This document shows positions 1,601 to 61,134 of a stretch of DNA of 64,000 nucleotides, piece after piece; position 1 is the first letter of the stretch; every line of letters begins with the position of its first letter. The notes beneath the pieces were generated by a model. That model ran no database searches, had not been told where the DNA came from, and saw nothing but the letters and a program-made list of their open reading frames with translations. The stretch spans positions 359,290,001 through 359,354,000 of the forward strand of contig NW_027362769.1 in the NCBI RefSeq assembly GCF_046119375.1, read 5' to 3'. The translations under genes were made by a program, and so were the position numbers. The DNA is from Phyllobates terribilis (Eukaryota).

Positions 1601-1665
1601 CCTCCAGCTCCGGCCTCAGTGTTTTCCTATCAGGAGATATTTGTGTTCTAGTTCCGCAGCACACG

Positions 1666-2322
1666 ATGGCCGAGACCGCACCAGCCGCCGCTCCCCCTCC
1701 CGCAGAACCGGCCGCCAAATCCAAGAAACAGCCGAAGAAATCCGCCGCCGGGGGCGCCAAGAAAAGCAAGAAACCCTCCGGTCCCAGCGTCGCCGATCTG
1801 ATCGTGAAAGCCGTGTCCGCCTCTAAGGAGCGCAGTGGGGTGTCTCTGGCCGCCCTGAAGAAGGCTCTGTCTGCCGGAGGATACGATGTAGAGAAGAACA
1901 ACAGCCGCCTGAAGCTGGCCGTCAAGGCTCTGGTCACCAAGGGCGCCCTCCTCCAGGTGCAGGGCAGCGGCGCCTCCGGGTCCTTCAAGCTAAACAAGAA
2001 GCAGCAGGAGACTAAGGACAAAGCGGCCAAGAAGAAGTCAGCAGCTGCGGCCAAGCCCAAGAAACCCGCTGCAGCCAAGAAAGCCGCCAAGTCTCCGAAG
2101 AAGCCCAAGAAGGCTCCCACCGCGGCCAAGAAGAGCCCGAAAAAGGCCAAGAAGCCCGCAGCAGCTGCCAAGAAGGCGGCCAAGAGCCCCAAGAAGCCAA
2201 AGGCCGCTCCGAAGCCCAAGAAGGTGACGAAGAGTCCGGCTAAGAAAGCTGCTAAACCCAAAGCTGCCAAGAGTCCTGCTAAGAAGGCAGCTAAAGCCAA
2301 GAAGCCCGCAGCTAAGAAATAA
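1666..2322 (+). CDS. H1: Somatic replication-dependent linker histone H1, 218 aa; true start MAETAP at 1666, not the ORF-track start at 1537
   Basis: Globular domain ([13 protein letters not shown]...[15 protein letters not shown]...GASGSFKL), K/A/P-rich tail with SPKK motifs, intronless, followed by a stem-loop. Confidence 0.98.
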
Positions 2323-2352
2323 TCCAAAGCTGCCATGTTATTACCCCACAAA

Positions 2353-2394
2353 GGCTCTTTTTAGAGCCACCACCTTGTCCCCTTCAGAGCTGTA
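2353..2394 (+). terminator. H1 3' stem-loop and histone downstream element (HDE)
   Basis: GGCTCT-TTTT-AGAGCC 2353-2368, then ACCA, then CAGAGCTGTA 2385-2394. Confidence 0.95.
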
Positions 2395-3850
2395 TGATCA
2401 GTGCCACCACCTTGTCCCCGGCAGAGCTGTATGATCAGTGCCACCACCTTGTCCCCGGCAGCGCTGTATGATCAGTGCCACCACCTTGTCCCCGGCAGAG
2501 CTGTATGATCAGAGCCTCCACCTTGTCCCCGGCAGAGCTGTATGATCAGAGCCACCACCTTGTCCCCTCCCTGCAGAGCTGTATGATAAGTGCCACCACC
2601 TTGTCCCCGGCAGAGCTGTATAATCAGTGCCACCACCTTGTCCCCGGCAGCGCTGTATGATCAGTGCCACCACCTTGTCCCCGGCAGCGCTGTATGATCA
2701 GTGCCACCACCTTGTCCCCGGCAGAGCTGTATGATCAGTGCCACCACCTTGTCCCCGGCAGAGCTGTATGATCAGTGCCACCACCTTGTCCCCGGCAGAG
2801 CTGTATGATCAGTGCCACCACCTTGTCCCCGGCAGAGCTGTATGATCAGTGCCACCACCTTGTCCCCGGCAGAGCTGTATGATTAGTTCCACCACCTTGT
2901 CCCCGCCAGAGCTGTATTTTCAGTGCCACCACCTTGTCCCCGCCAGAGCTGTATGATCAGTGCCACCACCTTGTCCCCGGCAGAGCTGTATGATTAGTGC
3001 CACCACCTTGTCCCCGCCAGAGCTGCATGATTAGTGCCACCACCTTGTCCCCGGCAGAGCTGTATTTTCAGTGCCACCACCTTGTCCCCGGCAGAGCTGT
3101 ATGATCAGAGCCACCACCTTGTCCCCTCCCTGCAGAGCTGTATAATCAGTGCCATCATCTTGTCCCCGGCAGAGCTGTATGATCAGAGCCACCACCTTGT
3201 CCCCTGCAGAGCTGTATAATCAGTGCCATCATCTTGTCCCCGGCAGAGCTGTATGATCAGTGCCACCACCTTGTCCCCTGCAGAGCTGTATAATCAGTGC
3301 CATCATCTTGTCCCCGGCAGAGCTGTATGATCAGAGCCACCACCTTGTCCCCTGCAGAGCTGTATGATCAGTGCCACCACCTTGTCCCCGGCAGAGCTGT
3401 ATAAGTGCCACCACCTTGTCCTCTGCAGAGCTGTATAATCAGTGCCACCACCTTGTCCCCGGCAGAGCTGTATAAGTGCCACCACCTTGTCCCCGGCAGA
3501 GCTGTATGATCAGTGCCACCACCTTGTCCCCGGCAGAGCTGTATGATCAGTGCCACCACCTTGTCCCCGGCAGAGCTGTATGATCTGTGCTACCACCTTG
3601 TCCCCGGCAGAGCTGTATGATCAGTGCCACCACCTTGTCCCCTGCAGAGCTTTATGATCAGTGCCACCACCTTGTCCCCGGCAGAGCTGTATGATCAGTG
3701 CCACCACCTTGTCCCCGGCAGAGCTGTATGATCAGTGCCACCACCTTGTCCCCGGCAGAGCTGTATGATCAGAGCCACCACCTTGTCCCCGGCAGAGCTG
3801 TATGATCAGTGCCATCATCTTGTCCCCGGCAGATCTGTATGATCAGTGCC
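2365..3850 (+). repeat. 37-bp tandem array, about 40 copies, built from the H1 cleavage site plus HDE
   Basis: Unit gtgccaccaccttgtccccggcagagctgtatgatca starts inside the 3' arm of the stem-loop. Confidence 0.95.
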
Positions 3851-4299
3851 CGTATATCCTGCCGCTTCTAGATTATAGTGTGTACAGGGAGCGGCTCCAG
3901 TGTTATAATGAATAAGCTTTTCCCCACATCTCCGCATAGAGCTGCGCTGTGTCCCGATCACACCAGTGCAGGTGACCGATCAGTGTAATCAATGGAGGGA
4001 AGGGGCCGATGTCCTACAGAAATCTAATTCTTACATCATCCTAATCAATCACCACTTGTAACCTGCGTCTTTATTAGTGAAAGGATTAGTGTGCGGTTAT
4101 TACTTCGATGTGAGAATTGGAGAACCAGTGATTTGACTGATGATAGAGTAGACCCTGTACAGCTCCGTGTACTGGTGACATAGAAGAACAGTGACGACGG
4201 CGGCTCTTGCTGTAGAAGCCGCATGTAGACATGGTGTGACCCTGTGCCAGTATCCGCAGCCAGAAAAGAGTGTGAACAGAGACCCTGCCCCTCTTTTTG

Positions 4300-4918
<619 letters not shown>

Positions 4919-4947
4919 ATCCGTCCTACACGTCTGACTATAACAAA

Positions 4948-4990
4948 GGCTCTTTTCAGAGCCACCAAATCCTCCATAATAACGAGCTGA
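4948..4990 (+). terminator. H3 3' stem-loop and HDE
   Basis: GGCTCT-TTTC-AGAGCC 4948-4963; GAGCTG 4984-4989. Confidence 0.95.
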
Positions 4991-6796: not shown

Positions 6797-7318
<522 letters not shown>

Positions 7319-9160: not shown

Positions 9161-9498
9161 GCAGCGATTATTCCTCGTTTACATCACATACAGGAGTCTG
9201 TAGAGTTTCGGGATTAGGGGAGCAGATCTTTTTCTTCAGTACATTGCATCACAATCACTATTGTGGAGGACTATATACTGATCGGGGATTTATCCTACAA
9301 GAGACATTTCTAGAAAGATCAATTCTACTTTCCCATGCAGATCTCATTATGTCTCCCCGATCATCTCCTCAGCAGTTTTCCAGTAATCCATTTACAGATC
9401 AATTCTACAGCTAAAGGCAGGAGGTTTGTGACAGGACACGTACGATTGTGGATTGCAGATTGCTGAGAGTTCATTGCTCAGAACATTACACTCTGCTG
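9161..9498 (+). other. Block B copy 1, truncated by the L2; near-identical to 61603-61937
   Basis: Direct repeat from gcagcgattattcctcgtttacatc to ctctgctgtcagg. Confidence 0.9.
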
Positions 9499-9762
9499 TC
9501 AGGCATGCAGTATAGGTCAGGCATGCAGTATAGGTCAGGCATGCAGTATAGGTCAGGCATGCAGTATAGGTCAGGCATGCAGTATAGGTCAGGCATGCAG
9601 TATAGGTCGGGCATGCAGTATAGGTCAGGCATGCAGTATAGGTCAGGCATGCAGTATAGGTCAGGCATGCAGTATAGGTCGGGCATGCAGTATAGGTCAG
9701 GCATGCAGTATAGGTCAGGCATGCAGTATAGGTCAGGCATGCAGTATAGGTCAGGCATGCAG
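9499..9762 (+). repeat. 18-bp minisatellite tcaggcatgcagtatagg, about 14.7 copies
   Basis: Tandem copies directly visible, with a tcggg variant. Confidence 0.97.
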
Positions 9763-9860
9763 TTAGATCCTCAGTCATCACATCCTCCTCAGGAGATTCT
9801 TTCCTGCTCAGGTACTGATCGCTCTTCTGCTCTTTCTCTTGTCCTCTCCCTCTTTATCCA

Positions 9861-9937
9861 CTGACACTGAACATGGACCCCGTCTCCTCCCAACAGAGAG
9901 AAGCTCCGCACTCCAGTTGTGCTTCCCTGCCGGATAA
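9861..9937 (-). pseudogene. Decayed inverted H1 promoter relic with no H1 CDS
   Basis: Minus strand ttatccggcagggaagcacaactggagtgcggagctt...gggaggagacgggg...cagtgtcag aligns to 1445-1529; CCAAT boxes are lost. Confidence 0.8.
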
Positions 9938-9943
9938 TGTCTG

Positions 9944-10066
9944 TCGTACAGAAAGCGGATTGTACGATGTGGAGACGATCTGGAGCTGCTGAGACCCCAG
10001 AAGGGTAACACAGGCGATGGCCTCCGCTGACTGCCACCTCCCTGACCTGTAATATAAGTACACCCC
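9944..10066 (+). other. 123-bp conserved element E123, copy 2
   Basis: 119/123 identical to the reverse complement of 1063-1185; 121/123 identical to 62885-63007. Confidence 0.9.
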
Positions 10067-10169
10067 ACTATTGTGCAAAAGGTGAACTGCTGAGAGAAGA
10101 CACAAAATGCAGCGTCTACACACAGAGCACAGCTGTATATAGTGCACAGACTGCACAACAATTATATAC

Positions 10170-13100
10170 AGCAGTGTGTATAGTATATAGAGCTGCCTGT
10201 ACAGTATATAGAGCTGCCTGTACAGTATATAGAGCAGTGTGTGCAGTATATAGAGCAGAGTGTACAGTATATAGAGCAGTGTGTACAGTATATAGAGCAG
10301 TGTGTACAGTATATAGAGCAGCCTGTACAGTATATAGAGCAGTGTGTGCAGTATATAGAGCAGAGTGTACAGTATATAGAGCTGCCTGTACAGTATATAG
10401 AGCAGTGTGTGCAGTATATAGAGCAGAGTGTACAGTATATAGAGCAGTGTGTACAGTATATAGAGCAGTGTGTACAGTATATAGAGCAGCCTGTACAGTA
10501 TATAGAGCAGTGTGTACAGTATATAGAGCAGCCTGTACAGTATATAGAGCAGTGTGTACAGTATATAGAGCTGCCTGTACAGTATATAGAGCAGTGTGTG
10601 CAGTATATAGAGCAGAGTGTACAGTATATAGAGCTGCCTGTACAGTATATAGAGCCGCCTGTACAGTATATAGAGCAGCCTGTACAGTATATAGAGCAGC
10701 CTGTACATTATATAGAGCAGTGTGTACAGTATATAGAGCAGCCTGTACAGTATATAGAGCAGCCTGTACAGTATATAGAGCAGTGTGTGCAGTATATAGA
10801 GCAGCCTGTACAGTATATAGAGCAGCCTGTACATTATATAGAGCAGTGTGTGCAGTATATAGAGCAGAGTGTACAGTATATAGAGCTGCCTGTACAGTAT
10901 ATAGAGCAGTGTGTGCAGTATATAGAGCAGAGTGTACAGTATATAGAGCTGCCTGTACAGTATATAGAGCAGCCTATACAGTATATAGAGCAGCGTGTAC
11001 AGTATATAGATCAGTGTGTACAGTATATAGAGCTGCCTGTACAGTATGTAGAGCAGCCTATACAGTATATAGAGCAGTGTGTACAGTATATAGAGCAGTG
11101 TGTACAGTATATAGAGCAGTCTGTACAGTATAAAGAGCAGCGTGTGCAGTATATAGAGCAGCCTGTACAGTATATAGAGCTGTGTGTACAGTATATAGAG
11201 CAGCCTGTACAGTATATAGAGCAGTGTGTACAGTATATAGAGCAGCCTGTACAGTATATAGAGCAGCCTGTACAGTATATAGAGCAGTGTGTACAGTATA
11301 TAGAGCTGCCTGTACAGTATATAGAGCTGCCTGTACAGTATATAGAGCAGCGTGTGCAGTATATAGAGCAGTGTGTACAGTATATAGAGCAGCCTGTACA
11401 GTATATAGAGCAGTGTGTACAGTATATAGAGCTGCCTGTACAGTATATAGAGCTGCCTGTACAGTATATAGAGCAGCGTGTGCAGTATATATAGCAGCCT
11501 GTACAGTATATAGAGCAGCCTGTACAGTTTATAGAGCAGCCTGTACAGTATATAGAGCAGTGTGTACAGTATATAGAGCAGTGTGTACAGTATATAGAGC
11601 AGCCTGTACAGTATATAGAGCAGCCTGTACAGTATATAGAGCAGTGTGTACAGTATATAGAGCTGCCTGTACAGTATATAGAGCAGCCTGTACAGTATAT
11701 AGAGCAGCGTGTGCAGTATATAGAGCAGTGTGTACAGTATATAGAGCAGCCTGTACAGTATATAGAGCAGCGTGTGCAGTATATAGAGCAGTGTGTACAG
11801 TATATAGAGCAGTGTGTACAGTATATAGAGCAGCCTGTACAGTATATAGAGCAGTGTGTACAGTATATAGAGCTGCCTGTACAGTATATAGAGCAGCCTG
11901 TACAGTATATAGAGCAGCGTGTGCAGTATATAGAGCAGTGTGTACAGTATATAGAGCAGCCTGTACAGTATATAGAGCAGCGTGTGCAGTATATAGAGCA
12001 GTGTGTACAGTATATAGAGCAGTGTGTACAGTATATAGAGCTGCCTGTATAGTATATAGAGCAGCCTGTACAGTATATAGAGCAGCCTGTACAGTATATA
12101 GAGCAGCGTGTACAGTATATAGAGCAGCCTGTACAGTATATAGAGCAGTGTGTATAGTATATAGAGCAGCCTGTACAGTATATAGAGCAGTGTGTACAGT
12201 ATATAGAGCAGCGTGTGCAGTATATAGAGCAGTGTGTACAGTATATAGAGCAGCCTGTACAGTATATAGAGCAGTGTGTATAGTATATAGAGCAGCCTGT
12301 ACAGTATATAGAGCTGCGTGTATAGTATATAGAGTAGTGTGTATAGTATATAGAACAGTGTGTACAGTATATAGAGCTGTGTGTTCAGTATATAGAGCTG
12401 CCTGTACAGTATATAGAGCTGTGTGTATAGTATATAGAGTAGTGTGTACAGTATATAGAGCAGCCTGTACAATATATAGAGCAGTGTGTACAGTATATAG
12501 AGCAGTATATACAGTGTATAGAGCAGTATATACAGTATATAGAGCAGCCTGTACAGTATATAGAGCAGTGTGTACAGTATACAGAGCAGTGTGTACAGTA
12601 TATAGAGCAGCCTGTACAGTATATAGAGCAGTGTGTATAGTATATAGAGCAGCCTGTACAGTATATAGAGCTGCGTGTACAGTATATAGAGCTGCCTGTA
12701 CAGTATATAGAGCTGCGTGTACAGTATATAGAGCTGCCTGTACAGTATATAGAGCAGGGTGTACAGTATATAGAGCAGCCTGTACAGTATATAGAGCAGT
12801 GTGTATAGTATATAGAGCAGCCTGTACAGTATATAGAGCAGTGTGTATAGTATATAGAGCTGCCTGTACAGTATATAGACCAGGGTGTACAGTATATAGA
12901 GCAGTGTGTACAGTATGTAGAGCAATGTGTACAGTATATAGAGCAGCCTGTACAGTTTATAGAGCAGGGTGTACAGTATATAGAGCAGTGTGTATAGTAT
13001 ATAGAGCAGAGTGTACAGTATATAGAGCAGTGTGTACAGTATATAGAGCAGCCTGTACAGTATATAGAGCTGTGTGTATAGTATATAGAGTAGTGTGTAC

Positions 13101-15522
13101 AGTATATAGATCAGCCTGTACAATATATAGAGCAGCCTGTACAGTATATAGAGCAGTGTGTACAGTATATACAGCAGTGTGTACAGTATATAGAGCAGTG
13201 TGTACAGTATATAGAGCAGCCTGTACAGTATATAGAGCAGTCTGTATAGTATATAGAGCAGTGTGTATAGTATATAGAGCAGCCTGTACAGTATATAGAG
13301 CAGCCTGTACAGTATATAGAGCTGCGTGTATAGTATATAGAGTAGTGTGTATAGTATATAGAGCTGCCTGTACAGTATATAGAGCAGGGTGTACAGTATA
13401 TAGAGCAGTGTGTACAGTATGTAGAGCAATGTGTACAGTATATAGAGCAGCATGTACAGTTTATAGAGCAGGGTGTACAGTATATAGAGCAGTGTGTATA
13501 GTATATAGAGCAGAGTGTACAGTATATAGAGCTGCCTGTACAGTATATAGAGCTGTGTGTATAGTATATAGAGTAGTGTGTACAGTATATAGAGCAGCCT
13601 GTACAATATATAGAGCAGCCTGTACAGTATATAGAGCAGTGTGTACAGTATATACAGCAGTGTGTACAGTATATAGAGCAGTGTGTACAGTATATAGAGC
13701 AGTGTGTACAGTATATAGAGCAGCCTGTACAGTATATAGAGCAGTCTGTATAGTATATAGAGCAGCCTGTACAGTATATAGAGCAGTGTGTACAGTATAT
13801 AGAGTAGTGTGTATAGTATATAGAGCAGCCTATACAGTATATAGAGCAGTGTGTACAGTATATAGATTAGTGTGTATACTATATAGAGCAGCCTATACAG
13901 TATATAGAGCAGTGTGTACAGTATATAGAGCAGTGTGTACAGTATATAGAGCAGTGTGTATAGTATATAGAGCAGCCTATACAGTATATAGAGCAGTGTG
14001 TACAGTATATAGAGCAGTGTGTACAGTATATAGAGTAGCCTGTACAGTATAAAGAGCTGCCTGTACAGTATATAGAGCAGCCTATACAGTATATAGAGCA
14101 GTGTGTACAGTATATAGAGCAGTGTGTATAGTATATAGAGCAGCCTGTACAGTATATAGAGCAGTGTGTACAGTATATAGAGCAGTGTGTATAGTATATA
14201 GAGCAGCCTGTACAGTATATAGAGCTGCCTGTACAGTATATAGAGCAGTGTGTACAGTATATAGAGCAGTGTGTACAGTATATAGAGCAGCCTGTACAGT
14301 ATATAGAGCAGTGTGTACAGTATATAGAGCAGTGTGTATAGTATATAGAGCAGCCTGTACAGTATATAAAGCTGCGTGTATAGTATATAGAGTAGTGTGT
14401 ATGGTATATAGAGCAGCCTATACAGTATATAGAGCAGTATGTACAGTATATAGAGCAGTGTGTACAGTATATAGAGCTGTGTGTTCAGTATATAGAGCTG
14501 CCTGTACAGTATATAGAGCTGTGTGTATAGTTTATAGAGTAGTGTGTACAGTATATAGAGCAGCCTGTACAATATATAGAGCAGTGTGTACAGTATATAG
14601 AGCAGTGTGTACAGTATATAGAGCAGCCTGTACAGTATATAGAGCAGCCTGTACAGTATATAGAGCTGCCTGTACAGTATGTAGAGCAGCCTATACAGTA
14701 TATAGAGCAGTGTGTACAGTATATAGAGTAGTGTGTATAGTATATAGAGCAGCCTATACAGTATATAGAGCAGTGTGTTCAGTATATAGAGTAGTGTGTA
14801 TAGTATATAGAGCAGCCTATACAGTATATAGAGCAGTGTGTACAGTATATAGAGTAGTGTGTATAATATATAGAGCAGCCTATACAGTATATAGAGCAGT
14901 GTGTACAGTATATAGAGTAGTGTGTATAGTATATAGAGCAGCCTATACAGTATATAGAGCAGTGTGTACAGTATATAGAGTAGTGTGTATAGTATATAGA
15001 GCAACCTATACAGTATATAGAGCAGTGTGTACAGTATATAGAGCAGTGTGTACAGTATATAGAGCAGCGTGTACAGTATATAGAGCAGCCTGTACAGTAT
15101 GTAGAGCAGTGTGTACAGTATATAGAGCAGCCTGTACAGTATATAGAGCAGTGTGTATAGTATATAGAGCAGCCTGTACAGTATATAGAGCAGCGTGTAC
15201 AGTATATAGAGCAGTGTGTACAGTATATAGAGCAGTGTGTACAGTATATAGAGCTGCCTGTACAGTATATAGAGCAACGTGTGCAGTATATAGAGCAGTG
15301 TGTATAGTATATAGAGCTGCCTGTACAGTATGTAGACCAGTGTGTACAGTATATAGAGCAGCCTGTACAGTATATAGAGCAGGGTGTACAGTATATAGAG
15401 CAGAGTGTACAGTATATAGAGCAGCCTGTACAGTATATAGAGCTGCCTTTACAGTATATAGAGCTGTGTGTACAGTATATAGAGCTGCCTGTACAGTATA
15501 TAGAGCAGTGTGTACAGTATAT
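10170..15522 (+). repeat. 21-bp satellite, segment I (about 255 units)
   Basis: Unit tatatagagc(a/t)gNNtgtacag. Confidence 0.99.
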
Positions 15523-16008: not shown

Positions 16009-17720
16009 ATGCGAAAACTAGCACTCAAAAAATACTACCTGAAACATCAGGACCGGGGGCACATAAATGAACCTAGAAACTCACTCACTTTGAAATATGC
16101 CCACACCAACTTAAAAACCAAATCCAAATTCCATCCATTAAACGAATACTCATCTGCACTCGAAAGTTTTCAAAACAATGTCATCTCAGATATCCGTAAA
16201 TTAAGCCACAAAAAATGTAACAAATTCCAATACAACTTTAACGCCTCTGAAAGGAAAGCAATATATATCTTACAGAAAAATCAGAACATAATTATCCGTC
16301 CAGCTGATAAAGGAGGTGGTATAGTTATACTGGATCTAGAACAATATCAATCAGAAACAAACAGACTACTAAGTGACACAAGAACATACAATACTATGAG
16401 GGAGGACCCCACAGATATGTACCTAAAAGAACTAAAAACACTAACTACCAAAGGACTAGATAAAGGCTTCCTTACGAAACAGGAGTTTGAATACATCACT
16501 ATCTCCCACCCACGTCTTGCAACATTTTATTATCTACCAAAAATACATAAGTCACTCTCCCATCCTCCAGGCAGACCTATCATCTCAGGTATCCAATGCC
16601 TAACATCAAATCTATCCAGATTTGTGGATAAACACTTACAAGACCTAGTACCCCTTTTGCCGACATATTTAAAAGACAGTCAACATGTACTTCAGCTTTT
16701 ACAAAAAATCAAATGGCATGACAATTTCATCCTAGGCACCCTGGACATCTCGTCCTTATACACCGTGATTCAGCATAATGCGGGCTGCGACGCAGCCACA
16801 CATTTTCTTTTGAAACAAAACAAACTACCTAAAGAACAAATAATGTTCATGAAGGAATGTATGAAGTTCATACTGACGCATAATTATTTTAAACACGATA
16901 AACTTTTCTACACACAACAATGGGGCACAGCAATGGGTACTAGATTTGCCCCAAGCTATGCCAATCTATACGTTGGCAAATGGGAGGAGTTAGCTATCCA
17001 CCCAGGCGGCACACTCAGACCTAACTTGGTATTTTGGCAAAGATTTATTGACGACGTACTTTTTATCTGGTCTGGTGACCAAGAATCCCTAGACTCCTTT
17101 ATCAGGGAGATCAATATCAATAACTTTTTCTTGGAATTTACCTCCAACATAAGCCAAAAACAGCTAAACTTCTTAGATCTCAACATATATATCCAAGATC
17201 AAAAAATCCATACAAAAACATATATGAAGCCAACGGACTCAAATAGCTTCATCTCTCTGGACAGCTGTCACCTCCCCAGCTGGCTGTTAAACATCCCACG
17301 CAGTCAATACATGAGATTATATAGAAATTGCTCCAACACTGGGGACTTCAACGAAGAAGCCATACAATTAACAAATAAATTTTTAGAAAAAGGTTACAAT
17401 CCACAATTTTTACAAAAAGTGAAAAATCAGATTCAAACTATACCCAGAGATAACCTCCTCAAGAACAGCACCACAAAAATTAATGCCACTGACCCTACAA
17501 CACAACCAGATATCCCTATCATAACTCAATACAACTCCAATACATATTTATTAAGAAAAATAATTTCAAAACACTGGCATATCCTTCACGATGACAAAAC
17601 AATAGGCGACCTTATTCCACCAAAACCAAGATTCATCTATAGGAAAGCAAAAAACCTAGGGAACCTCATCGCACCAACAGTTCGCAATCCTCAAATCATT
17701 AATCAACCCACACTTATTAA
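16009..17720 (+). CDS. Penelope-like reverse transcriptase, N-terminal part; frame is open from 15736
   Basis: Motifs ADKGGG, PKIHK, GRPIISG, LDISSLYT, GTAMGTRFAPSYANL, RFIDD; interrupted at TTAA 17717-17720. Confidence 0.92.
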
Positions 17721-19194
17721 CCCCTTAATAACATCTGACGTACTAATACGCGTCTGTGCCCTGGGACTTAAGAGCCAGACCCGTATTAGTACGTCATCGC
17801 GATCGCGCGCGCACACAGGCTGTGCGGGCGCGATCGCCGCCGGGTGTCAGCTGATTGTCACAGCTGACACCCGGTATTATGTGCAGGGAGCGGTCCTGCA
17901 CCGCTCCCAGCACATTAACCCCCGCGATGCTGCGATCGAAGTCGATTGAAGTCGATCGCGGCATTGCGGGGGCAAGGGGAGGTGATCGGCGATACTCACC
18001 ACCTCTTCCGGCTTCCAGCGCAGTCTGCAAAGGCTTACCGGGTGTTGCCATGACGACCCGATGTCGTCATGACAACATCCGGGTCACCAGAGAGCAGGAA
18101 GATTGCTTGGACATGCGCAGTGCATCTCCAAGCAATCTTCACACTGTGCATTTCTGACAGCCTTCATGGCATAGGGATGGTGCTCCATTCCTGTGCCATG
18201 CAGGCGATCAGAAAAAAAAAAGTGAAAGTCTCAGAGTGGGACAAAGTAATAAAGTGTATAAACTGTGTGAAAGTGGAAAAAAAAAAAAATGTGCAAAAAT
18301 ATTCTAAAAAAATAAAAAAAATAATACACCAAAAATAAAAATATAATGTACCCATCAATAAATATTATTATAAAAAAAACAAAAAAAAAAACAGTAAAAG
18401 TACACATATTTGGTATCACCGCGTCCGGAAAAACCTGACCTATAAAACTGTCCCACTAGTTAACCCCTTCAGTGAACACGGTAAAAAAAAAAAAAAACGA
18501 AGCAAAAAACAATGCTTTATCACCATACCGCCAAACAAAAAGTGGAATAACACGCGATCAAAAAGACGCATATAAATAAAAATGATACCGCTGAAAACGT
18601 CATCTCGTCCCGCAAAAAACAAGCCGCCATACAGCTCCATCAGCTGAAAAATCAAAAAGTTATAGCTCTCAGAATAAAGCGATACTAAAAAATATTTTTT
18701 TCTATAAAATAGCTTTTATTGTGTATAAGCGCCAAAACATAGAAAAATGATACAAATGTGGTACCGCTGTAAACGTACTGACCCGAAGAATAAAGCTACC
18801 TCATCAATTTTACCACACGCGGAACAGAATAAAAAAAAAAAAAAAAAAAACAATTCCTGAATTGTTGGTTTTTGTTTATTCTGCCTCCCAAAAATCGGAA
18901 TAGAAAGTGATCAAAAAATGTCACGTGCCTGAGAATGGCACCAATAACAACGTCAAGTCATCCCGGAAAAAACGAGCCGTCACATGACTGTCTGCCAAAA
19001 TCTGGAAAAATTATAGCTCTCAAAATATGGCGATGCAAAAACTAGATTTTACAAAAAATGCGTCTTTTAGTGTGTGACAGCTGTCAGTCATAAAAACCCC
19101 ATATGATTCTGGCATTGCTGTAATCACACCGACCCGAAGAATAAAGTCGTCTAATCACTTATACCGCACAAGGAACGGCGTCAAAAATAAACTC

Positions 19195-23630: not shown

Positions 23631-24010
23631 ACTCTAAGTATACGGGGAACAATCCGGTCACTAAAACCCCACCCCCCCTTTTTTTTCCCCTTCTCTTTCT
23701 CCTTTTTACACATAGGAAATATCCAGACTACTATCCTTCTAAAAACTGGCCTAGAAACCCACGAGACTACCACTACCAGGAACCTCCAAAAAGCCTCCAC
23801 CCCAAAAGACCCACCAGCTATCTCTATCTAATATTTTATCATTTTTTAACCTTCATTATGATTTAACGTCATTTTTATGCGAGATTTACTATTTAAAATA
23901 AAAACTCTTTTATCATCCTCTCTTATTGTCCACATTTTTGTCCCCAACAACCTTCCCCCTTCAAGTATACGGCCTAAACCTTACCAGCGCAGGATATTTT
24001 AACTATTTCT

Positions 24011-27000
24011 ACAGTATATAGAGCAGCCTGTACAGTATATAGAGCTGCCTGTACAGTATATAGAGCAGTGTGTACAGTATATAGAGCAGCCTGTACAGTA
24101 TATAGAGCAGTCTGTACAGTATATAGAGCAGTGTGTACAGTATATAGAGCAGTGTGTACAGTATATAGAGCAGCCTGTACAGTATATAGAGCAGTGTGTA
24201 CAGTATATAGAGCAGCCTGTACAGTATATAGAGCAGTCTGTACAGTATATAGAGCAGCCTGTACATTATATAGAGCAGTGTGTACAGTATATAGAGCTGC
24301 CTGTACAGTATATACAGCAGTGTGTACAGTATATAGAGCAGCATGTACAGTATATAGAGCAGTGTGTACAGTATATAGAGCAGCCTGTACAGTATATAGA
24401 GCAGTGTGTACAGTATATAGAGCAGCATGTACAGTATATAGAGAAGCCTGTACAGTATATAGAGCAGTGTGTACAGTATATAGAGTAGTGTGTACAGTAT
24501 ATAGAGCAGCCTGTACAGTATATAGAGCAGTGTGTACAGTATATAGAGCAGCATGTACAGTATATAGAGAAGCCTGTATAGTATATAGAGCAGTGTCTAT
24601 AGTATATAGAGCAGCCTGTACAGTATATAGAGCAGTGTGTACAGTATATAGAGCAGAGTGTACAGTATATAGAGCAGTGTGTACAGTATATAGAGCAGTG
24701 TGTATAGTATATAGAGCCGTGTGTACAGTATATAGAGCAGCCTGTACAGTATATAGAGCAGCGTGTGCAGTATATAGAGCAGCCTGTACAGTATATAGAG
24801 CAGTGTGTACAGTATATAGAGCAGCCTGTACAGTATATAGAGCAGCGTGTGCAGTATATAGAGCAGCCTGTACAGTATATAGAGCAGCATGTACAGTATA
24901 TAGAGCTGCCTGTACAGTATATAGAGCTGCCTGTACAGTATATAGAGCAGCGTGTACAGTATATAGAGCAGCCTATACAGTATATAGAGCAGTGTGTACA
25001 GTATATAGAGCAGCCTGTACAGTATATAGAGCAGCGTGTACAGTATATAGAGCAGCCTGTACAGTATATAGAGCAGTGTGTACAGTATATAGAGCAGCCT
25101 GTACAGTATATAGAGCAGTGTGTACAGTATATAGAGCTGCCTGTACAGTATATAGAGCAGTGTGTACAGTATATAGAGCAGTGTGTACAGTATATAGAGC
25201 TGCCTGTACAGTATATAGAGCAGCCTGTAAATTATATAGAGCAGCCTGTACAGTATATAGAGCAGTGTGTACAGTATATAGAGCAGCATGTACAGTATAT
25301 AGAGAAGCCTGTACAGTATATAGAGCAGTGTGTACAGTATATAGAGCAGTGTCTATAGTATATAGAGCAGCCTGTACAGTATATAGAGCAGTGTGTACAG
25401 TATATAGAGCAGTGTGTATAGTATATAGAGCTGCCTGTACAGTATATAGAGCAGCCTGTACAGTATATAGAGCAGCGTGTGCAGTATATAGAGCAGCCTG
25501 TACAGTATATAGAGCAGCATGTATAGTATATAGAGCAGCCTGTATAGTATATAGAGCTGCCTGTATAGTATATAGAGCAATGTGTACAGTATATAGAGCT
25601 GCCTGTACAGTATATAGAGCAGCGTGTACAGTATATAGAGCAGCCTATACAGTATATAGAGCAGTGTGTACAGTATATAGAGCAGCCTGTACAGTATATA
25701 GAGCAGCGTGTACAGTATATAGAGCAGCCTGTACAGTATATAGAGCAGTGTGTACAGTATATACAGCAGTCTGTATAGTATATAGAGCTGTCTGTACAGT
25801 ATATAGAGCAGCCTGTACAGTATATAGAGCAGTGTGTACAGTATATAGAGCAGCCTGTACAGTATATAGAGCTGCCTGTACAGTATATAGAGCAGTGTGT
25901 ACAGTATATAGAGCAGCCTGTACAGTATATAGAGCTGTGTGTACAGTATATAGAGCTGCCTGTACAGTATATAGAGCAGTGTGTACAGTATATAGAGCAG
26001 CCTGTACAGTATATAGAGCAGCCTGTACAGTATATAGAGCTGCCTGTACAGTATATAGAGCAGGGTGTACAGTATATAGAGCAGCGTGTACAGTATATAG
26101 AGCAGTGTGTACAGTATATAGAGCAGTCTGTACAGTATATAGAGCAGCCTGTACATTATATAGAGCAGTGTGTACAGTATATAGAGCAGTGTGTACAGTA
26201 TATAGAGCAGCCTGTACAGTATATAGAGCAGTGTGTATAGTATATAGAGCTGCCTGCACAGTATATAGAGCTGCCTGTACAGTATATAGAGCAGTGTGTA
26301 CAGTATATAGAGCTGCCTGTACAGTATATAGAGCAGTGTGTACAGTATATAGAGCAGCCTGTACAGTATATAGAGCAGTGTGTGCAGTATATAGAGCAGC
26401 CTGTACAGTATATAGAGCAGTGTGTATAGTATATAGAGCAGTGTGTACAGTATATAGAGCTGCCTGTACAGTATATAGAGCAGTGTGTACAGTATATAGA
26501 CCTGCCTGTACAGTATATAGAGCAGTGTGTACAGTATATAGAGCAGCCTGTACATTATATAGAGCAGTGTGTACAGTATATAGAGCAGTGTCTATAGTAT
26601 ATAGAGCAGCCTGTACAGTATATAGAGCAGTGTGTACAGTATATAGAGCAGTGTGTATAGTATATAGAGCTGCCTGTACAGTATATAGAGCAGCCTGTAC
26701 AGTATATAGAGCAGCGTGTGCAGTATATAGAGCAGCCTGTACAGTATATAGAGCAGCATGTACAGTATATAGAGCTGCCTGTACAGTATATAGAGCAGCA
26801 TGTACAGTATATAGAGCAGCCTATACAGTATATAGAGCAGTGTGTACAGTATATAGAGCAGCCTGTACAGTATATAGAGCAGCGTGTACAGTATATAGAG
26901 CAGCCTGTACAGTATATAGAGCAGTGTGTACAGTATATAGAGCAGCCTGTACAGTATATAGAGCAGTGTGTACAGTATATAGAGCTGCCTGTACAGTATA

Positions 27001-30000
27001 TAGAGCAGTGTGTACAGTATATAGAGCTGCCTGTACAGTATATAGAGCAGCCTGTACAGTATATAGAGCAGTGTGTACAGTATATAGAGCAGCCTGTACA
27101 GTATATAGAGCAGTGTGTACAGTATATAGAGCAGCATGTACAGTATATAGAGAAGCCTGTACAGTATATAGAGCAGTGTGTACAGTATATAGAGCAGTGT
27201 CTATAGTATATAGAGCAGCCTGTACAGTATATAGAGCAGTGTGTACAGTATATAGAGCAGTGTGTATAGTATATAGAGCTGCCTGTACAGTATATAGAGC
27301 AGCCTGTACAGTATATAGAGCAGCGTGTGCAGTATATAGAGCAGCCTGTACAGTATATAGAGCAGCATGTACAGTATATAGAGCAATGTGTACAGTATAT
27401 AGAGCTGCCTGTACAGTATATAGAGCAGCGTGTACAGTATATAGAGCAGCCTATACAGTATATAGAGCAGTGTGTACAGTATATAGAGCAGCCTGTACAG
27501 TATATAGAGCAGCGTGTACAGTATATAGAGCAGCCTGTACAGTATATAGAGCAGTGTGTACAGTATATACAGCAGTCTGTATAGTATATAGAGCTGTCTG
27601 TACAGTATATAGAGCAGCCTGTACAGTATATAGAGCAGAGTGTACAGTATATAGAGCAGCCTGTACAGTATATAGAGCTGCCTGTACAGTATATAGAGCA
27701 GTGTGTACAGTATATAGAGCAGCCTGTACAGTATATAGAGCTGTGTGTACAGTATATAGAGCAGTGTGTACAGTATATAGAGCAGCCTGTACAGTATATA
27801 GAGCTGCCAGTACAGTATATAGAGCAGGGTGTACAGTATATAGATCAGCGTGTACAGTATATAGAGCAGTGTGTACAGTATATAGAGCAGTCTGTACAGT
27901 ATATAGAGCAGCCTGTACATTATATAGAGCAGTGTGTACAGTATATAGAGCAGTGTGTACAGTATATAGAGCAGCCTGTACAGTATATAGAGCAGTGTGT
28001 ATAGTATATAAAGCAGCCTGTACAGTATATAGAGCTGCCTGTACAGTATATAGAGCAGTGTGTACAGTATATAGAGCTGCCTGTACAGTATATAGAGCAG
28101 TGTGTACAGTATATAGAGCAGCCTGTACAGTATATAGAGCAGTGTGTACAGTATATAGAGCAGTGTGTACAGTATATAGAGCAGCCTGTACAGTATATAG
28201 AGCAGTGTGTACAGTATATAGAGCAGTGTGTACAGTATATAGACCTGCCTGTACAGTATATAGAGCAGTGTGTACAGTATATAGAGCAGTGTGTACAGTA
28301 TATAGAGCAGTGTGTACAATATATAGAGCAGCCTGTACAGTATATAGAGCAGGGTGTACAGTATATAGAGCAGCCTGTACAGTATATAGAGCAGTGTGTA
28401 CAGTATATAGAGCTGTGTGTACAGTATATAGAGCAGTGTGTACAGTATATAGAGCTGCCTGTACAGTATATAGAGCAGGGTGTACAGTATATAGAGCAGC
28501 CTGTACAGTTTATAGAGCAGTGTGTATAGTATATAGAGCAGTGTGTATAGTATATAGAGCAGTCTGTACAGTATATAGAGCAGTGTGTACAGTATATAGA
28601 GCAGTATGTACAGTATATAGAGCAGTGTGTACAGTATATACAGCAGTGTGTACAGTATATAGAGCAGTATGTACAGTATATAGAGCTGCCTGTACAGTAT
28701 ATAGAGCAGTGTGTACAGTATAAAGACCTGCCTGTACAGTATATAGAGCAGGGTGTACAGTATATAGAGCAGTGTGTACAGTATATAGAGCAGCCTGTAC
28801 ATTATATAGAGCAGTGTGTACAGTATATAGAGCTGCCTGTACAGTATATAGAGCAGTGTGTACAGTTTATAGAGCAGCCTGTACAGTATATAGAGCAGCC
28901 TGTACAGCATATAGAGCAGTCTGTACAGTATATAGAGCAGTGTGTACAGTATATAGAGCAGCCTGTACAGTTTATAGAGCAGTGTGTATAGTATATAGAG
29001 CAGTCTGTACAGTATATAGAGCAGTGTGTACAGTATATAGAGCAGTATGTACAGTATATAGAGCAGTGTGTACAGTATATACAGCAGTGTGTACAGTATA
29101 TAGAGCAGTATGTACAGTATATAGAGCTGCCTGTACAGTATATAGAGCAGTGTGTACAGTATATAGACCTGCCTGTACAGTATATAGAGCAGGGTGTACA
29201 GTATATAGAGCAGTGTGTACAGTATATAGAGCAGCCTGTACAGTATATAGAGCAGTGTGTACAGTATATAGAGCAGTGTGTACAGTATATAGAGCTGCCT
29301 GTACAGTATATAGAGCAGTGTGTACAGTTTATAGAGCAGCGTGTACAGCATATAGAGCAGTCTGTACAGTATATAGAGCAGTGTGTACAGTATATAGACC
29401 TGCCTGTACAGTATATAGAGCAGGGTGTACAGTATATAGAGCAGTGTGTACAGTATATAGAGCAGCCTGTACAGTATATAGAGCAGTGTGTACAGTATAT
29501 AGAGCAGCCTGTACAGTATATAGAGCAGTGTGTACAGTATATAGAGCAGCCTGTACAGTATATAGAGCAGTGTGTACAGTATATAGAGCAGTGTGTACAG
29601 TATATACAGCAGTGTGTACAGTATATAGAGCAGTATGTACAGTATATAGAGCTGCCTGTACAGTATATAGAGCAGTGTGTACAGTATATAGACCTGCCTG
29701 TACAGTATATAGAGCAGGGTGTACAGTATATAGAGCAGTATGTACAGTATATAGAGCAGTGTGTACAGTATATAGAGCAGTATGTACAGTATATAGAGCA
29801 GTGTGTACAGTATATACAGCAGTGTGTACAGTATATAGAGCAGTATGTACAGTATATAGAGCTGCCTGTACAGTATATAGAGCAGTGTGTACAGTATATA
29901 GACCTGCCTGTACAGTATATAGAGCAGGGTGTACAGTATATAGAGCAGTGTGTACAGTATATAGAGCAGCCTGTACAGTATATAGAGCAGTGTGTACAGT

Positions 30001-36000: not shown

Positions 36001-37754
36001 TACAGTATATAGAGCAGTGTGTACAGTATATAGAGCAGTGTGTATAGTATATAGAGCTGCCTGTACAGTATATAGAGCAGTGTGTACAGTATATAGAGCA
36101 GTGTGTACAGTATATAGAGCAGTATATACAGTGTATAGTGCAGTGTGTACAGTATATAGAGAAGCCTGTACAGTATATAGAGCAGTGTGTACAGTATATA
36201 GAGCAGTCTGTACTGTGTATAGAGCAGTGTGTACAGTATATAGAGCAGCGTGTACAGTATATAGAGCAGTGTGTACAGTATATAGAGCAGTGTGTATAGT
36301 ATATAGAGCTGCCTGTACAGTATATAGAGCAGTGTGTACAGTATATAGAGCAGTGTGTACAGTATATAGAGCAGTATATACAGTGTATAGTGCAGTGTGT
36401 ACAGTATATAGAGCTGCCTGTACAGTATATAGAGCAGTGTGTACAGTATATAGAGCAGGGTGTACAGTTTATAGAGCAGCCTGTACAGTATATACAGCAA
36501 CGTGTACAGTATATACAGCAGTGTGTACAGTATATAGAGCTGCCTGTACAGTATATAGAGCAGTGTGTATAGTATATAGAGCTGCCTGTACAGTATATAG
36601 AGCAGCCTGTAGAGTATATAGAGCAGGGTGTACAGTATATAGAGCAGTGTGTACAGTATATAGAGCAGCCTATACAGTATATAGAGCAGTGTGTACAGTA
36701 TATAGAGCAGTGTGTACAGTATATAGAGCTGCCTGTACAGTATATAGAACAGGGTGTACAGTATATAGAGCAGCCTGTACAGTATATAGAGCAGTGTGTA
36801 GAGTATATAGAACAGTGTGTATAGTATATAGAGCTGCCTGTACAGTATATAGAGCAGTGTGTACAGTATATAGAGCAGTGTGTACAGTATATTGAGCTGC
36901 CTGTACAGTATATAGAGCAGTGTGTACAGTATATAGAGCAGTATATACAGTGTATAGAGCAGTGTGTACAGTATATAGAGCAGTGTGTACAGTATAAAGA
37001 GCTGCCTGTACAGTATATAGAGTAGTGTGTACAGTATATAGAGCTGCCTGTACAGTATATAGAACAGGGTGTACAGTATATAGAGCAGCCTGTACAGTAT
37101 ATAGAGCAGTGTGTACAGTATATAGAACAGTGTGTATAGTATATAGAGCTGCCTGTACAGTATATAGAGCAGTGTGTACAGTATATAGAGCAGTGTGTAC
37201 AGTATATTGAGCTGCCTATACAGTATATAGAGCAGTGTGTACAGTATATAGAGCAGTATATACAGTGTATAGAGCAGTGTGTACAGTATATAGAGCAGTG
37301 TGTACAGTATAAAGAGCTGCCTGTACAGTATATAGAGCAGTGTGTACAGTATATAGAGCAGCCTGTACAGTATATAGAGCAGTGTGTACAGTATATAGAG
37401 CAGTCTGTACTGTGTATAGAGCAGTGTGTACAGTATATAGAGCAGCGTGTACAGTATATAGAGCCGTGTGTACAGTATATAGAGCAGCCTGTACAGTATA
37501 TAGAGTAGTGTGTATAGTATATAGAGCTGCCTGTACAGTATATAGAGCAGTGTGTACAGTATATAGAGCAGTATATACAGTGTATAGTGCAGTGTGTACA
37601 GTATATAGAGCAGCCTGTACAGTATATAGAGCAGGGTGTACAGTATATAGAGCAGCCTGTACAGTATATACAGCAGTGTGTACAGTATATAGAGCTGCCT
37701 GTACAGTATATAGAGCAGTGTGTATAGTATATAGAGCTGCCTGTACAGTATATA
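24011..37754 (+). repeat. 21-bp satellite, segment II (about 650 units)
   Basis: Continuous tandem array with higher-order duplications. Confidence 0.99.
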
Positions 37755-56864: not shown

Positions 56865-56944
56865 AGAGGAAGACCGTCACCGCTATGGACGTGGTGTACG
56901 CGCTCAAGCGCCAGGGCTGCACTCTCTACGGCTTCGGAGGTTAA
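56865..56944 (+). pseudogene. H4: 3' fragment of histone H4 (about codon 78 to stop) with an R-to-C change
   Basis: Matches 7239-7318 except cgc>tgc; 3' flank to 57101 is near-identical to 7319-7471. Confidence 0.95.
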
Positions 56945-56976
56945 TTGTATTCTCTGCTCCATCCTGACAACCCAAA

Positions 56977-59188: not shown

Positions 59189-59204
59189 GGCTCTTCTAAG
59201 AGCC
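59189..59204 (+). terminator. H2B 3' stem-loop
   Basis: GGCTCT-TCTA-AGAGCC followed by ACCA. Confidence 0.95.
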
Positions 59205-59209
59205 ACCAC

Positions 59210-61112
59210 CCCGTCTACATCAGAGCTGTGGCTGCTCCTGTGTCCTCTCCCGTCTACATCAGAGCTGTGGCTGCTCCTGTGTCCTCTCCCGTCTACATCA
59301 GAGCTGTGGCTGCTCCTGTGTCCTCTCCCGTCTACATCAGAGCTGTGGCTGCTCCTGTGTCCTCTCCCGTCTACATCGGAGCTGTGGCTGCTCCTGTGTC
59401 CTCTGCCGTCTACATCGGAGCTGTGGCTGCTCCTGTGTCCTCTGCCGTCTACATCGGAGCTGTGGCTGCTCCTGTGTCCTCTGCCGTCTACATCGGAGCT
59501 GTGGCTGCTCCTGTGTCCTCTCCCGTCTACATCGGAGCTGTGGCTGCTCCTGTGTCCTCTCCCGTCTCCATCGGAGCTGTGGCTGCTCCTGTGTCCTCTC
59601 CCGTCTACATCGGAGCTGTGGCTGCTCCTGTGTCCTCTCCCGTCTCCAGAGCTGTGGCTGCTCCTGTGTCCTCTCCCGTCTACATCAGGGCTGTGGCTGC
59701 TCCTGTGTCCTCTCCCGTCTACATCAGAGCTGTGGCTGCTCCTGTGTCCTCTCCCGTCTACATCAGAGCTGTGGCTGCTCCTGTGTCCTCTCCCGTCTAC
59801 ATCAGAGCTGTGGCTGCTCCTGTGTCCTCTCCCGTCTACATCAGGGCTGTGGCTGCTCCTGTGTCCTCTCCCGTCTCCATCAGAGCTGTGGCTGCTCCTG
59901 TGTCCTCTCCCGTGTACATCAGAGCTGTGGCTGCTCCTGTGTCCTCTCCCGTGTACATCAGAGCTGTGGCTGCTCCTGTGTCCTCTCCCGTCTACATCAG
60001 AGCTGTGGCTGCTCCTGTGTCCTCTCCCGTCTACATCGGAGCTGTGGCTGCTCCTGTGTCCTCTGCCGTCTACATCGGAGCTGTGGCTGCTCCTGTGTCC
60101 TCTGCCGTCTACATCGGAGCTGTGGCTGCTCCTGTGTCCTCTGCCGTCTCCATCGGAGCTGTGGCTGCTCCTGTGTCCTCTCCCGTCTACATCAGAGCTG
60201 TGGCTGCTCCTGTGTCCTCTCCCGTCTACATCGGAGCTGTGGCTGCTCCTGTGTCCTCTCCCGTCTACATCGGAGCTGTGGCTGCTCCTGTGTCCTCTCC
60301 CGTCTACATCGGAGCGGTGGCTGCTCCTGTGTCCTCTCCCGTCTACATCGGAGCTGTGGCTGCTCCTGTGTCCTCTGCCGTCTACATCGGAGCGGTGGCT
60401 GCTCCTGTGTCCTCTCCCGTCTACATCGGAGCGGTGGCTGCTCCTGTGTCCTCTCCCGTCTACATCGGAGCTGTGGCTGCTCCTGTGTCCTCTCCCGTCT
60501 ACATCAGGGCTGTGGCTGCTCCTGTGTCCTCTCCCGTCTCCATCAGAGCTGTGGCTGCTCCTGTGTCCTCTCCCGTCTCCATCAGAGCTGTGGCTGCTCC
60601 TGTGTCCTCTCCCGTCTCCATCAGGGCTGTGGCTGCTCCTGTGTCCTCTCCCGTCTCCATCAGAGCTGTGGCTGCTCCTGTGTTCTCTCCCGTCTCCATC
60701 AGAGCTGTGGCTGCTCCTGTGTCCTCTCCCGTCTCCATCAGAGCTGTGGCTGCTCCTGTGTCCTCTCCCGTCTCCATCAGAGCTGTGGCTGCTCCTGTGT
60801 CCTCTCCCGTGTACATCAGAGCTGTGGCTGCTCCTGTGTCCTCTCCCGTGTACATCAGAGCTGTGGCTGCTCCTGTGTCCTCTCCCGTCTACATCAGAGC
60901 TGTGGCTGCTCCTGTGTCCTCTCCCGTCTACATCAGAGCTGTGGCTGCTCCTGTGTCCTCTCCCGTCTACATCAGAGCTGTGGCTGCTCCTGTGTCCTCT
61001 CCCGTCTACATCGGAGCTGTGGCTGCTCCTGTGTCCTCTCCCGTCTACATCAGAGCGGTGGCTGCTCCTGTGTCCTCTCCCGTCTCCATCAGAGCTGTGG
61101 CTGCTCCTGTGT
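59210..61112 (+). repeat. 39-bp tandem array, about 49 copies, each carrying the H2B HDE
   Basis: Unit cccgtctacatcagagctgtggctgctcctgtgtcctct starts 5 nt after the stem-loop. Confidence 0.97.
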
Positions 61113-61134
61113 TCTGTCTATTCACAGGGTAAAT

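What the first reader, a model, noticed from the sequence alone, without database searches (positions are those of the whole stretch)
2365..3850. H1 3' end is followed by about 40 tandem copies of the cleavage site plus U7-binding HDE
Seen: the 37-bp unit is exactly the 3' arm of the stem-loop (GCC-ACCA), the spacer and CAGAGCTGTA. Established: the HDE pairs with the 5' end of U7 snRNA (vertebrate ...GUGUUACAGCUCUUU...); AGAGCTGTA gives 9 contiguous base pairs. Inference: uncleaved or read-through H1 RNA would carry about 40 U7 docking sites. These could act as fail-safe cleavage sites, a U7 sponge, or an RNA scaffold for the histone locus body. I know of no description of HDE arrays, but cannot search the literature.
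Basis: partly seen in the sequence, partly recalled or inferred. Interest (0 to 1): 0.85.

Follow-up and report, generated by a model that had tools for sequence, protein, structure and literature searches.

The report
Minisatellite copied from histone H1 tail
Behind a poison-frog histone H1 gene, the short signal that tells the cell where to cut the histone RNA has been copied 40 times head to tail; the copies are real and their origin seems undescribed, but they behave like drifting repeat DNA, not like a working device.

Summary
Observation confirmed. A 37-bp unit repeated 40 times (2364-3850) starts inside the 3' arm of the H1 stem-loop. Each unit carries the ACCA cleavage context, the spacer and the U7-complementary element. 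34 of 40 units keep AGAGCTGTA. Only the first unit has a hairpin.

New here:
- The single-copy H1 3' flank of Leptodactylus fuscus equals the array consensus over 34 nt apart from one C. So the unit is the conserved native processing block.
- L. fuscus, Xenopus tropicalis and Spea bombifrons have one signal and no array.
- Inside the array the U7 element varies as much as the rest (4/9 against 13/28 variable positions), and all four of its changes break pairing.
- A second, independent 39-bp x49 array sits behind H2B. Its U7 element is the most variable part, although its commonest change keeps a G.U pair.
- Four RNA libraries show H1 mRNA. Three of them hold short array contigs, none joined to the gene, and the library richest in H1 holds none.

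Verdict: a lineage-specific minisatellite born from the H1 processing signal, most likely neutral. A fail-safe or U7-docking role is not excluded but has no support. Two arrays starting at two processing sites is unlikely by chance and remains unexplained.

The scan already noted the same arrays at other H1 and H2B copies of this genome. Two follow-ups there also judged them neutral.

The parts
1666..2322 (+). Histone H1 coding sequence (218 aa plus stop)
   Evidence: ORF. Pfam Linker_histone 6.6e-22. RNA-library contigs cover 1618-2334, with adapter plus GGG at 1618-1629 marking the transcript start.
2353..2368 (+). H1 3' stem-loop (6-bp stem, UUUU loop), the only hairpin of the region
   Evidence: Sequence. 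Rfam RF00032 at 2348-2393, 32.4 bits, E 5e-7, just under the gathering score of 34. The only stable element in the RNA fold.
2369..2372 (+). ACCA, the expected cleavage context of the native site
   Evidence: Sequence. Its position relative to stem and HDE follows the vertebrate rule, which is established knowledge and was not tested here.
2386..2394 (+). Native HDE core AGAGCTGTA, 9 nt complementary to UACAGCUCU of the U7 5' region
   Evidence: U7 sequences from PMC7026596. The same block is present as a single copy behind Leptodactylus fuscus H1.
2364..3850 (+). 37-bp x 40 tandem array of [end of stem 3' arm + ACCACC + spacer + HDE + TGATCA]; 23 unit types
   Evidence: It ends with GCC before unique DNA, so the founding duplication had GCC at both junctions.
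3108..3475 (+). Higher-order sub-repeats inside the array: alternating unit types (about 74 bp) at 3108-3333, and 34+37-bp pairs (71 bp) at 3371-3475
   Evidence: Unit-type string ...LMNMOMPQRQ.... This is typical of unequal exchange.
3851..4507 (+). Unique spacer between the array and the H3 gene; no AATAAA or ATTAAA
4508..4918 (+). Histone H3 gene, same strand, next downstream; its stem-loop at 4943-4988 has no array
59189..59204 (+). H2B 3' stem-loop (the H2B body is partly N-masked at 58875-59159 and was left as is)
59209..61116 (+). Independent 39-bp x 49 array that starts 5 nt after the H2B stem-loop; each unit holds (C/G)AGAGCTGTGG
   Evidence: It shares only CAGAGCTGT with the H1 unit.

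Best explanation
This is a lineage-specific minisatellite born from the native 3'-processing block of histone H1. A 37-bp segment bounded by GCC on both sides, running from the last three bases of the stem-loop to just past the U7-binding element, was duplicated in tandem. It was then expanded and reshuffled by replication slippage or unequal exchange, as in any satellite. The H1 mRNA is still made at the first, hairpin-bearing site. The 39 downstream units lie beyond the cut and are not needed. Because they are recent copies of a working signal, most still look competent for U7 pairing, but that likeness is inherited, not maintained. Shown: the origin, the structure, the lack of hairpins, the lack of extra conservation of the U7 element, the absence from three other anurans, and the conservation of the single native block. 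Inferred: neutrality, the slippage mechanism, and a local mutational bias (hairpin or polymerase pausing at a gene transcribed during S phase) as the reason why both H1 and H2B grew arrays at the same kind of place.
For: The unit is the native flank, and the array starts in the stem's 3' arm and ends at GCC. The L. fuscus single-copy H1 flank matches the array consensus over 34 nt with one C indel and then becomes unalignable, so the unit is the conserved functional block. Spea, Xenopus and Leptodactylus H1 loci have one stem-loop, one HDE and no array. Within the array there are 23 unit types among 40 units, with 2.3 differences per pair of units. HDE positions vary like the others (4/9 against 13/28, p=1; departures 6/315 against 36/980, p=0.14). 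All four HDE changes break U7 pairing, leaving six units at -7 to -11 kcal/mol. In the H2B array the HDE departs from consensus more than the rest of the unit (27/368 against 22/1426). Higher-order sub-repeats are present. There is no hairpin and no significant RNA structure in the copies. The H1-to-H3 spacing differs between two loci of the same assembly, 2186 against 1042 bp, as expected if copy number varies. 54% of the window is tandem repeat, so this genome expands repeats readily.
Against: Two independent arrays begin between stem-loop and HDE of two of five histone genes. Under uniform placement of the window's 13 arrays the chance is about 0.0004-0.002, so something local, either mutation bias or selection, is at work. 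85% (H1) and 92% (H2B) of units keep strong U7 complementarity, and the commonest H2B change (A to G) keeps a G.U pair. Array words occur in three of four RNA libraries at roughly a tenth to a half of the H1 coding depth, so some copies may be transcribed. The arrays are young and homogenised, so the tests for selection have little power. Array words also occur under three other organism labels, so the array has persisted across species.
Confidence: 0.7

Rival explanations
1. Fail-safe processing and termination array. Polymerases that miss the first site transcribe further U7 sites. Each site could direct CPSF73 cleavage at its own ACCA and let a 5'-3' exonuclease end transcription before the H3 promoter 660 bp downstream.
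For: 26 units keep both GCCACCACC and AGAGCTGTA at the native spacing, and 34 keep the U7 complement. All units are in sense orientation and both arrays start right at the processing site. H1 and H2B have the best U7 matches of the five genes, 9 and 8 nt against 5-6. There is no poly(A) signal behind the arrays that could serve as a backup. Array words occur in RNA libraries.
Against: No hairpin in units 2-40, so no SLBP help for a duplex of only 9 bp. It is established knowledge that weak HDEs depend on SLBP. The HDE is not better kept than the spacer, and all four HDE changes in the H1 array are disruptive. H3, H4 and H2A in the same cluster, and H1 in three other frogs, do without an array. 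No contig bridges the gene and the array, and the library with most H1 holds no array words.
Confidence: 0.15
2. U7 sponge or scaffold. Array RNA tethers many U7 snRNPs at the locus and helps to build or feed the histone locus body (the sphere organelles of amphibian oocytes).
For: There are many U7-complementary sites per transcript. Amphibian histone loci bind sphere organelles, and U7 is concentrated there (Gall et al. 1981 pmid 7327042; Wu and Gall 1993 PMC46907, cited). Newt histone loci do read through into satellite DNA (Diaz and Gall 1985 pmid 2931253).
Against: No conservation signal. Earlier unchecked notes give copy numbers from about 10 to about 1200 units between loci, which does not suggest a tuned dose. 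U7 is scarce, 1e3-2e4 molecules per cell according to PMC11417402, and in human cells overexpressing HDE-bearing lincRNAs did not change U7 level or histone processing. No oocyte RNA data were available here.
Confidence: 0.06
3. Assembly artefact: the array or its length was produced by mis-assembly of repeats.
For: Tandem repeats are error-prone in assemblies. DNA runs hold only about a third of the sampled array words.
Against: Independent DNA runs from three studies and RNA libraries hold array words, including variant units. The unit variants form an ordered, non-periodic pattern. Earlier notes report the same arrays at many loci.
Confidence: 0.02

Closest known systems
Canonical replication-dependent histone 3' signal (stem-loop, ACCA cleavage site, HDE paired with the U7 5' end)
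   Same: Unit 1 is such a signal. Its sequence is shared nearly base for base with the single-copy H1 flank of Leptodactylus fuscus.
   Different: Units 2-40 are HDE-plus-cleavage-context only, without the SLBP hairpin. No natural array of these was found in the literature.
Newt (Notophthalmus) histone clusters embedded in satellite DNA, with giant read-through transcripts on lampbrush chromosomes (Diaz and Gall 1985, pmid 2931253; Gall et al. 1981, pmid 7327042)
   Same: An amphibian histone cluster interleaved with long tandem-repeat tracts: 54% of this window. Failure of 3' processing there sends polymerase into repeats.
   Different: To my knowledge the newt satellite is unrelated in sequence to the histone genes. 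Here the repeat itself is the processing signal. Read-through is not shown here.
PcP190 satellite DNA of hyloid frogs, derived from 5S rDNA (PMC4201667, PMC11675491)
   Same: A frog satellite born from part of a tandemly repeated multigene family, and transcribed at a low level.
   Different: PcP190 derives from the transcribed gene body, has a 190-bp unit and is spread over seven families. This repeat derives from a 37-bp 3' flank signal. It was absent at the one H1 locus examined in Leptodactylus.
HDE-like motifs multiplied in human LTR12 elements, through which U7 snRNA represses transcription (PMC11417402)
   Same: U7-complementary motifs present in several copies inside repeated DNA, and a tested precedent for U7 acting outside histone 3' ends.
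   Different: Those motifs are 15 nt, near-perfect, sit at transcript starts next to NF-Y sites, and act without cleavage. Here the match is 9 nt, 3' of the gene, and no function is shown.

Membership tests
Histone 3' processing signal (Rfam RF00032 stem-loop plus HDE) | 16-nt stem-loop recognised by SLBP | tested here: not met
   Unit 1 only: 2348-2393, 32.4 bits (gathering score 34). No match in units 2-40 at E up to 10.
Histone 3' processing signal (Rfam RF00032 stem-loop plus HDE) | ACCA-type cleavage context at a fixed distance upstream of the HDE | tested here: met
   33/40 units keep GCCACCACC. 26/40 keep it together with AGAGCTGTA at the native spacing.
Histone 3' processing signal (Rfam RF00032 stem-loop plus HDE) | HDE complementary to the 5' end of U7 snRNA | tested here: met
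   34/40 units have 9 contiguous pairs and -14.0 kcal/mol, against -7.3 +/- 2.3 for shuffles, using mouse and human U7 from PMC7026596. The species' own U7 was not available.
Histone 3' processing signal (Rfam RF00032 stem-loop plus HDE) | U7- and CPSF73-dependent cleavage in vivo or in vitro | not testable with these tools
   RNA contigs stop at 2263-2334 and none spans the site.
Minisatellite / satellite DNA | Head-to-tail units with variant blocks and higher-order periodicity | tested here: met
   40.1 copies, 92% matches, 23 unit types, 74- and 71-bp sub-repeats.
Minisatellite / satellite DNA | Copy number differs between loci or individuals | tested here: inconclusive
Earlier unchecked notes give 10 to about 1200 units.
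Minisatellite / satellite DNA | Lineage-restricted; absent at the orthologous place in outgroups | tested here: met
   No array behind H1 in Spea bombifrons, Xenopus tropicalis or Leptodactylus fuscus. Array words occur in four organism labels only.
Minisatellite / satellite DNA | No position-specific constraint inside the unit | tested here: met
   HDE against other positions: 4/9 and 13/28 variable, p=1. In the H2B array the HDE is more variable. Power is low because units are homogenised.
U7-dependent HDE-like repressor motifs (LTR12 type, PMC11417402) | 15-nt motif with at most 2 mismatches to U7 nt 2-16 | tested here: not met
   The longest complement is 9 nt for H1 units and 8 nt plus two G.U pairs for H2B units.
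Newt-type histone locus with satellite read-through | Transcripts running from histone genes into the flanking repeats | tested here: inconclusive
   Short array contigs (32-66 nt, depth 5-30) occur in 3 of 4 RNA libraries, none joined to H1. DNA carry-over is not excluded.

The most novel reading that the evidence does not exclude
The H1 and H2B arrays are kept because nascent read-through RNA carrying dozens of U7 sites acts as a U7-dependent fail-safe terminator. It could also act as a local U7 landing pad that feeds the histone locus body in oocytes and early embryos. That would make it a natural multi-site HDE device without stem-loops.
Probability: 0.12. Interest if true: 0.8.

Novelty: new variant of a known kind. 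Interest (0 to 1): 0.36.

Why it matters
It shows a satellite being born from a short functional RNA-processing signal, twice in one gene cluster. A clean ancestral state is preserved in another frog family. That is a tidy case for how repeats arise next to highly transcribed genes. The arrays are also a natural set of constructs (one hairpin followed by 10 to more than 1000 hairpin-less U7 sites) on which the SLBP dependence of U7 cleavage, read-through control and locus-body nucleation could be tested. If the arrays are neutral, as the evidence suggests, the practical value is mostly a warning: motif-rich arrays need not be functional.

Tried and rejected
- Looking up H1 relatives in Ranitomeya imitator, Anomaloglossus baeobatrachus and a second Phyllobates locus gave gene tables but no DNA, because the files are too large. 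The in-group comparison therefore failed.
- The Eleutherodactylus coqui locus had a spliced gene model and no stem-loop, and was uninformative.
- Weak Rfam sR7 matches in the array (12 bits, E about 9) are chance.
- The RNA fold of stem-loop plus four units has z = -0.03, so the array RNA has no structure of its own.
- Literature searches for multiple or tandem HDEs found only the human LTR12 case.
- The 817-aa ORF across the H2B array is an artefact of a 39-bp period, which is 13 codons.
- I considered that the gene had landed beside a pre-existing satellite. I rejected this because the unit equals the single-copy flank of L. fuscus.

Full report
**What is in the window.** The window is a histone cluster soaked in tandem repeats.
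- H1 lies at 1666-2322 (+), H3 at 4508-4918 (+) and H4 at 7007-7318 (+).
- An H4 3' fragment with its stem-loop lies near 56972.
- H2A lies at 58092-58484 (-).
- H2B starts at 58774 (+) and is partly N-masked; I left the Ns as they are.
- Thirteen tandem arrays cover 54% of the 64 kb.
- The exact H1 protein is on record only in assembly GCA_046119375.1. A paralogous H1 of that same assembly is named Phyllobates terribilis by NCBI. The genome is therefore a poison frog, as earlier notes of the scan said.

- Tandem Repeats Finder reports 2366-3850, period 37, 40.1 copies, 92% matches.
- Splitting the array gives 40 units of 23 types.
- Unit 1 is the native 3' end: stem-loop at 2353-2368, ACCA at 2369-2372, 13 nt of spacer, AGAGCTGTA at 2386-2394.
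- The array ends with GCC before unique DNA. The founding duplication therefore had GCC at both junctions, which is what a microhomology-mediated tandem duplication looks like (inference).
- 34 of 40 units keep the 9-nt complement of UACAGCUCU in the U7 5' region. I took that sequence from the mouse and human U7 printed in PMC7026596.
- The predicted duplex is -14.0 kcal/mol, against -7.3 +/- 2.3 for shuffled units.
- Only one Rfam stem-loop match exists in 2250-4000, the native one. Units 2-40 are U7 sites without an SLBP hairpin.
- The array RNA has no structure of its own (z = -0.03).

**A second array.** Directly behind the H2B stem-loop (59189-59204) sits a 39-bp x49 array (59209-61116). 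It shares only CAGAGCTGT with the H1 unit, so it arose independently. With 13 arrays placed at random, two starting between the stem-loop and the HDE of five genes has a probability of about 0.0004-0.002. That figure is rough and post hoc. The coincidence is real and I cannot explain it from sequence alone.

**Where the unit comes from.**
- I fetched H1 loci of three other anurans whose genomes were small enough to be served.
- Spea bombifrons, Xenopus tropicalis and Leptodactylus fuscus each have one stem-loop, one HDE and no tandem array behind H1.
- The L. fuscus flank reads the same as the consensus unit of the Phyllobates array. The match runs from the stem's 3' arm through ACCACC, the spacer and GGCAGAGCTGTATGATC, with a single C missing. 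After that the two species cannot be aligned.
- So the 37-bp unit is, almost exactly, the block that selection keeps as a single copy across two frog families.
- The array consensus preserves the ancestral GG before the HDE. The native unit in this window has drifted to TT.

**Is the U7 element protected inside the arrays?**
- In the H1 array, 4 of 9 HDE positions vary, against 13 of 28 other positions (p = 1).
- Departures from consensus are 6/315 for the HDE against 36/980 for the rest (p = 0.14).
- All four kinds of HDE change break pairing, giving six units at -7 to -11 kcal/mol.
- In the H2B array the HDE departs from consensus more often than the rest of the unit (27/368 against 22/1426). 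The 3' half of that unit is almost invariant.
- In fairness, the commonest H2B change (A to G) keeps a G.U pair, and 41 of 49 units keep the full -18.8 kcal/mol.
- Units differ by 2.3 positions per pair. The native block, by contrast, has changed by one indel between families.
- The copies therefore evolve much faster than the working site.
- Alternating unit types (74-bp and 71-bp sub-repeats) show unequal exchange.
- These tests have little power, because the arrays are young and homogenised.

**RNA.**
- Four small libraries of the same species hold H1 mRNA.
- Contigs begin at 1618-1629 right after adapter plus GGG, which marks the cap site, and stop at 2263-2334.
- Depth is zero at 2345-2389 in three libraries. 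The fourth shows depth 4.4 there, from a contig that begins at 2380, past the cleavage site. No contig joins the gene to the array.
- Short array contigs (32-66 nt, depth 5-30, against 27-150 for the coding part) occur in three libraries.
- They are absent from the fourth, which has the most H1.
- A consensus word recurs 12-30 times per array. By my own estimate, a read-through of a few per cent, or some DNA carry-over from the many arrays in the genome, would be enough to give such depths.
Transcription of the array is possible but not shown.

**Distribution.** Array words occur in DNA runs of the species from three studies and under three further organism labels. The array is therefore shared by some relatives. 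The H1-to-H3 distance is 2186 bp here and 1042 bp at another locus of the assembly, consistent with varying copy number. Earlier notes of this scan list the same H1 and H2B arrays at many loci of this genome, from about 10 to about 1200 units. Two follow-ups on other DNA also concluded neutral satellite. I treat those as leads. My own tests agree.

**Comparison with what is known.**
- I found no paper describing tandem HDEs behind histone genes.
- Newt histone clusters are embedded in satellite DNA with giant read-through transcripts (Diaz and Gall 1985, pmid 2931253).
- The frog satellite PcP190 derives from 5S rDNA (PMC4201667).
- Human LTR12 elements carry several 15-nt HDE-like motifs through which U7 represses transcription. 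In that study, overexpressing HDE-bearing RNAs did not sponge U7 (PMC11417402).
- The present case differs from all three: the repeat unit is itself a 3'-processing signal.

**Verdict.** The origin from the H1 processing block is now firmly anchored by the outgroup. A function is unsupported.
- Neutral minisatellite: 0.70.
- Fail-safe cleavage and termination: 0.15.
- Sponge or scaffold: 0.06.
- Assembly artefact: 0.02.
- The remainder is unassigned.

Noticed in passing
window 59209-61116: Second, independent array: 39 bp x 49, directly behind the H2B stem-loop. Its A-to-G variant of the HDE (about 20 units, in blocks) keeps a G.U pair with U7. The 3' half of the unit is nearly invariant. The 817-aa ORF across it is a 13-codon periodicity artefact.
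   Followed up: yes
L003:4901-4953 (Leptodactylus fuscus) against window 2353-2400: The H1-specific 3' block (stem-loop, ACCACC, spacer, GGCAGAGCTGTATGATC) is conserved almost base for base between Leptodactylidae and Dendrobatidae. This includes the spacer and 7 nt beyond the 9-nt U7 complement. It hints that the hyloid U7 or another factor reads more than the core.
   Followed up: partly
window 10163-15522, 24010-37754, 44554-52299, 63104-63998: A 21-bp satellite (TATATAGAGCAGTGTGTACAG, with 42/63/84-bp higher orders) fills more than 27 kb of the window. A few units read AGAGCTGT, always on the + strand. Any relation to an HDE is unproven.
   Followed up: no
window 9392-10161 and 61831-63102: Two near-identical segments carry an 18-bp minisatellite (14.8 and 42.1 copies) next to the 21-bp satellite. 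This is a duplicated flank of the cluster with differing copy number.
   Followed up: no
window 56866-57017: An H4 3' fragment (the last ~26 codons plus a good stem-loop, 36.9 bits) abuts an LTR-retrotransposon remnant on the minus strand (integrase and RNase H, 54310-56428). The H4 gene was probably truncated by the insertion.
   Followed up: partly
window 39203-44217: Ty3/gypsy-like retrotransposon with gag-like, RT, RNase H and integrase ORFs (Pfam RVT_1, RT_RNaseH_2, rve) between two blocks of the 21-bp satellite. A further 646-aa ORF at 16009-17949 has no Pfam match.
   Followed up: partly
window 1618-2334: RNA-library contigs differ from this H1 copy at four coding positions in all four libraries (1927, 1960, 1992, 2118). 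One contig leaves the window sequence at 2334. The most expressed H1 is therefore probably another paralogue or allele.
   Followed up: no
window 2512-2589, 3108-3370, 3772-3808: Seven array units beside the native unit read GAGCC instead of GTGCC, restoring five bases of the stem's 3' arm. This could be a spread variant or conversion from unit 1.
   Followed up: no
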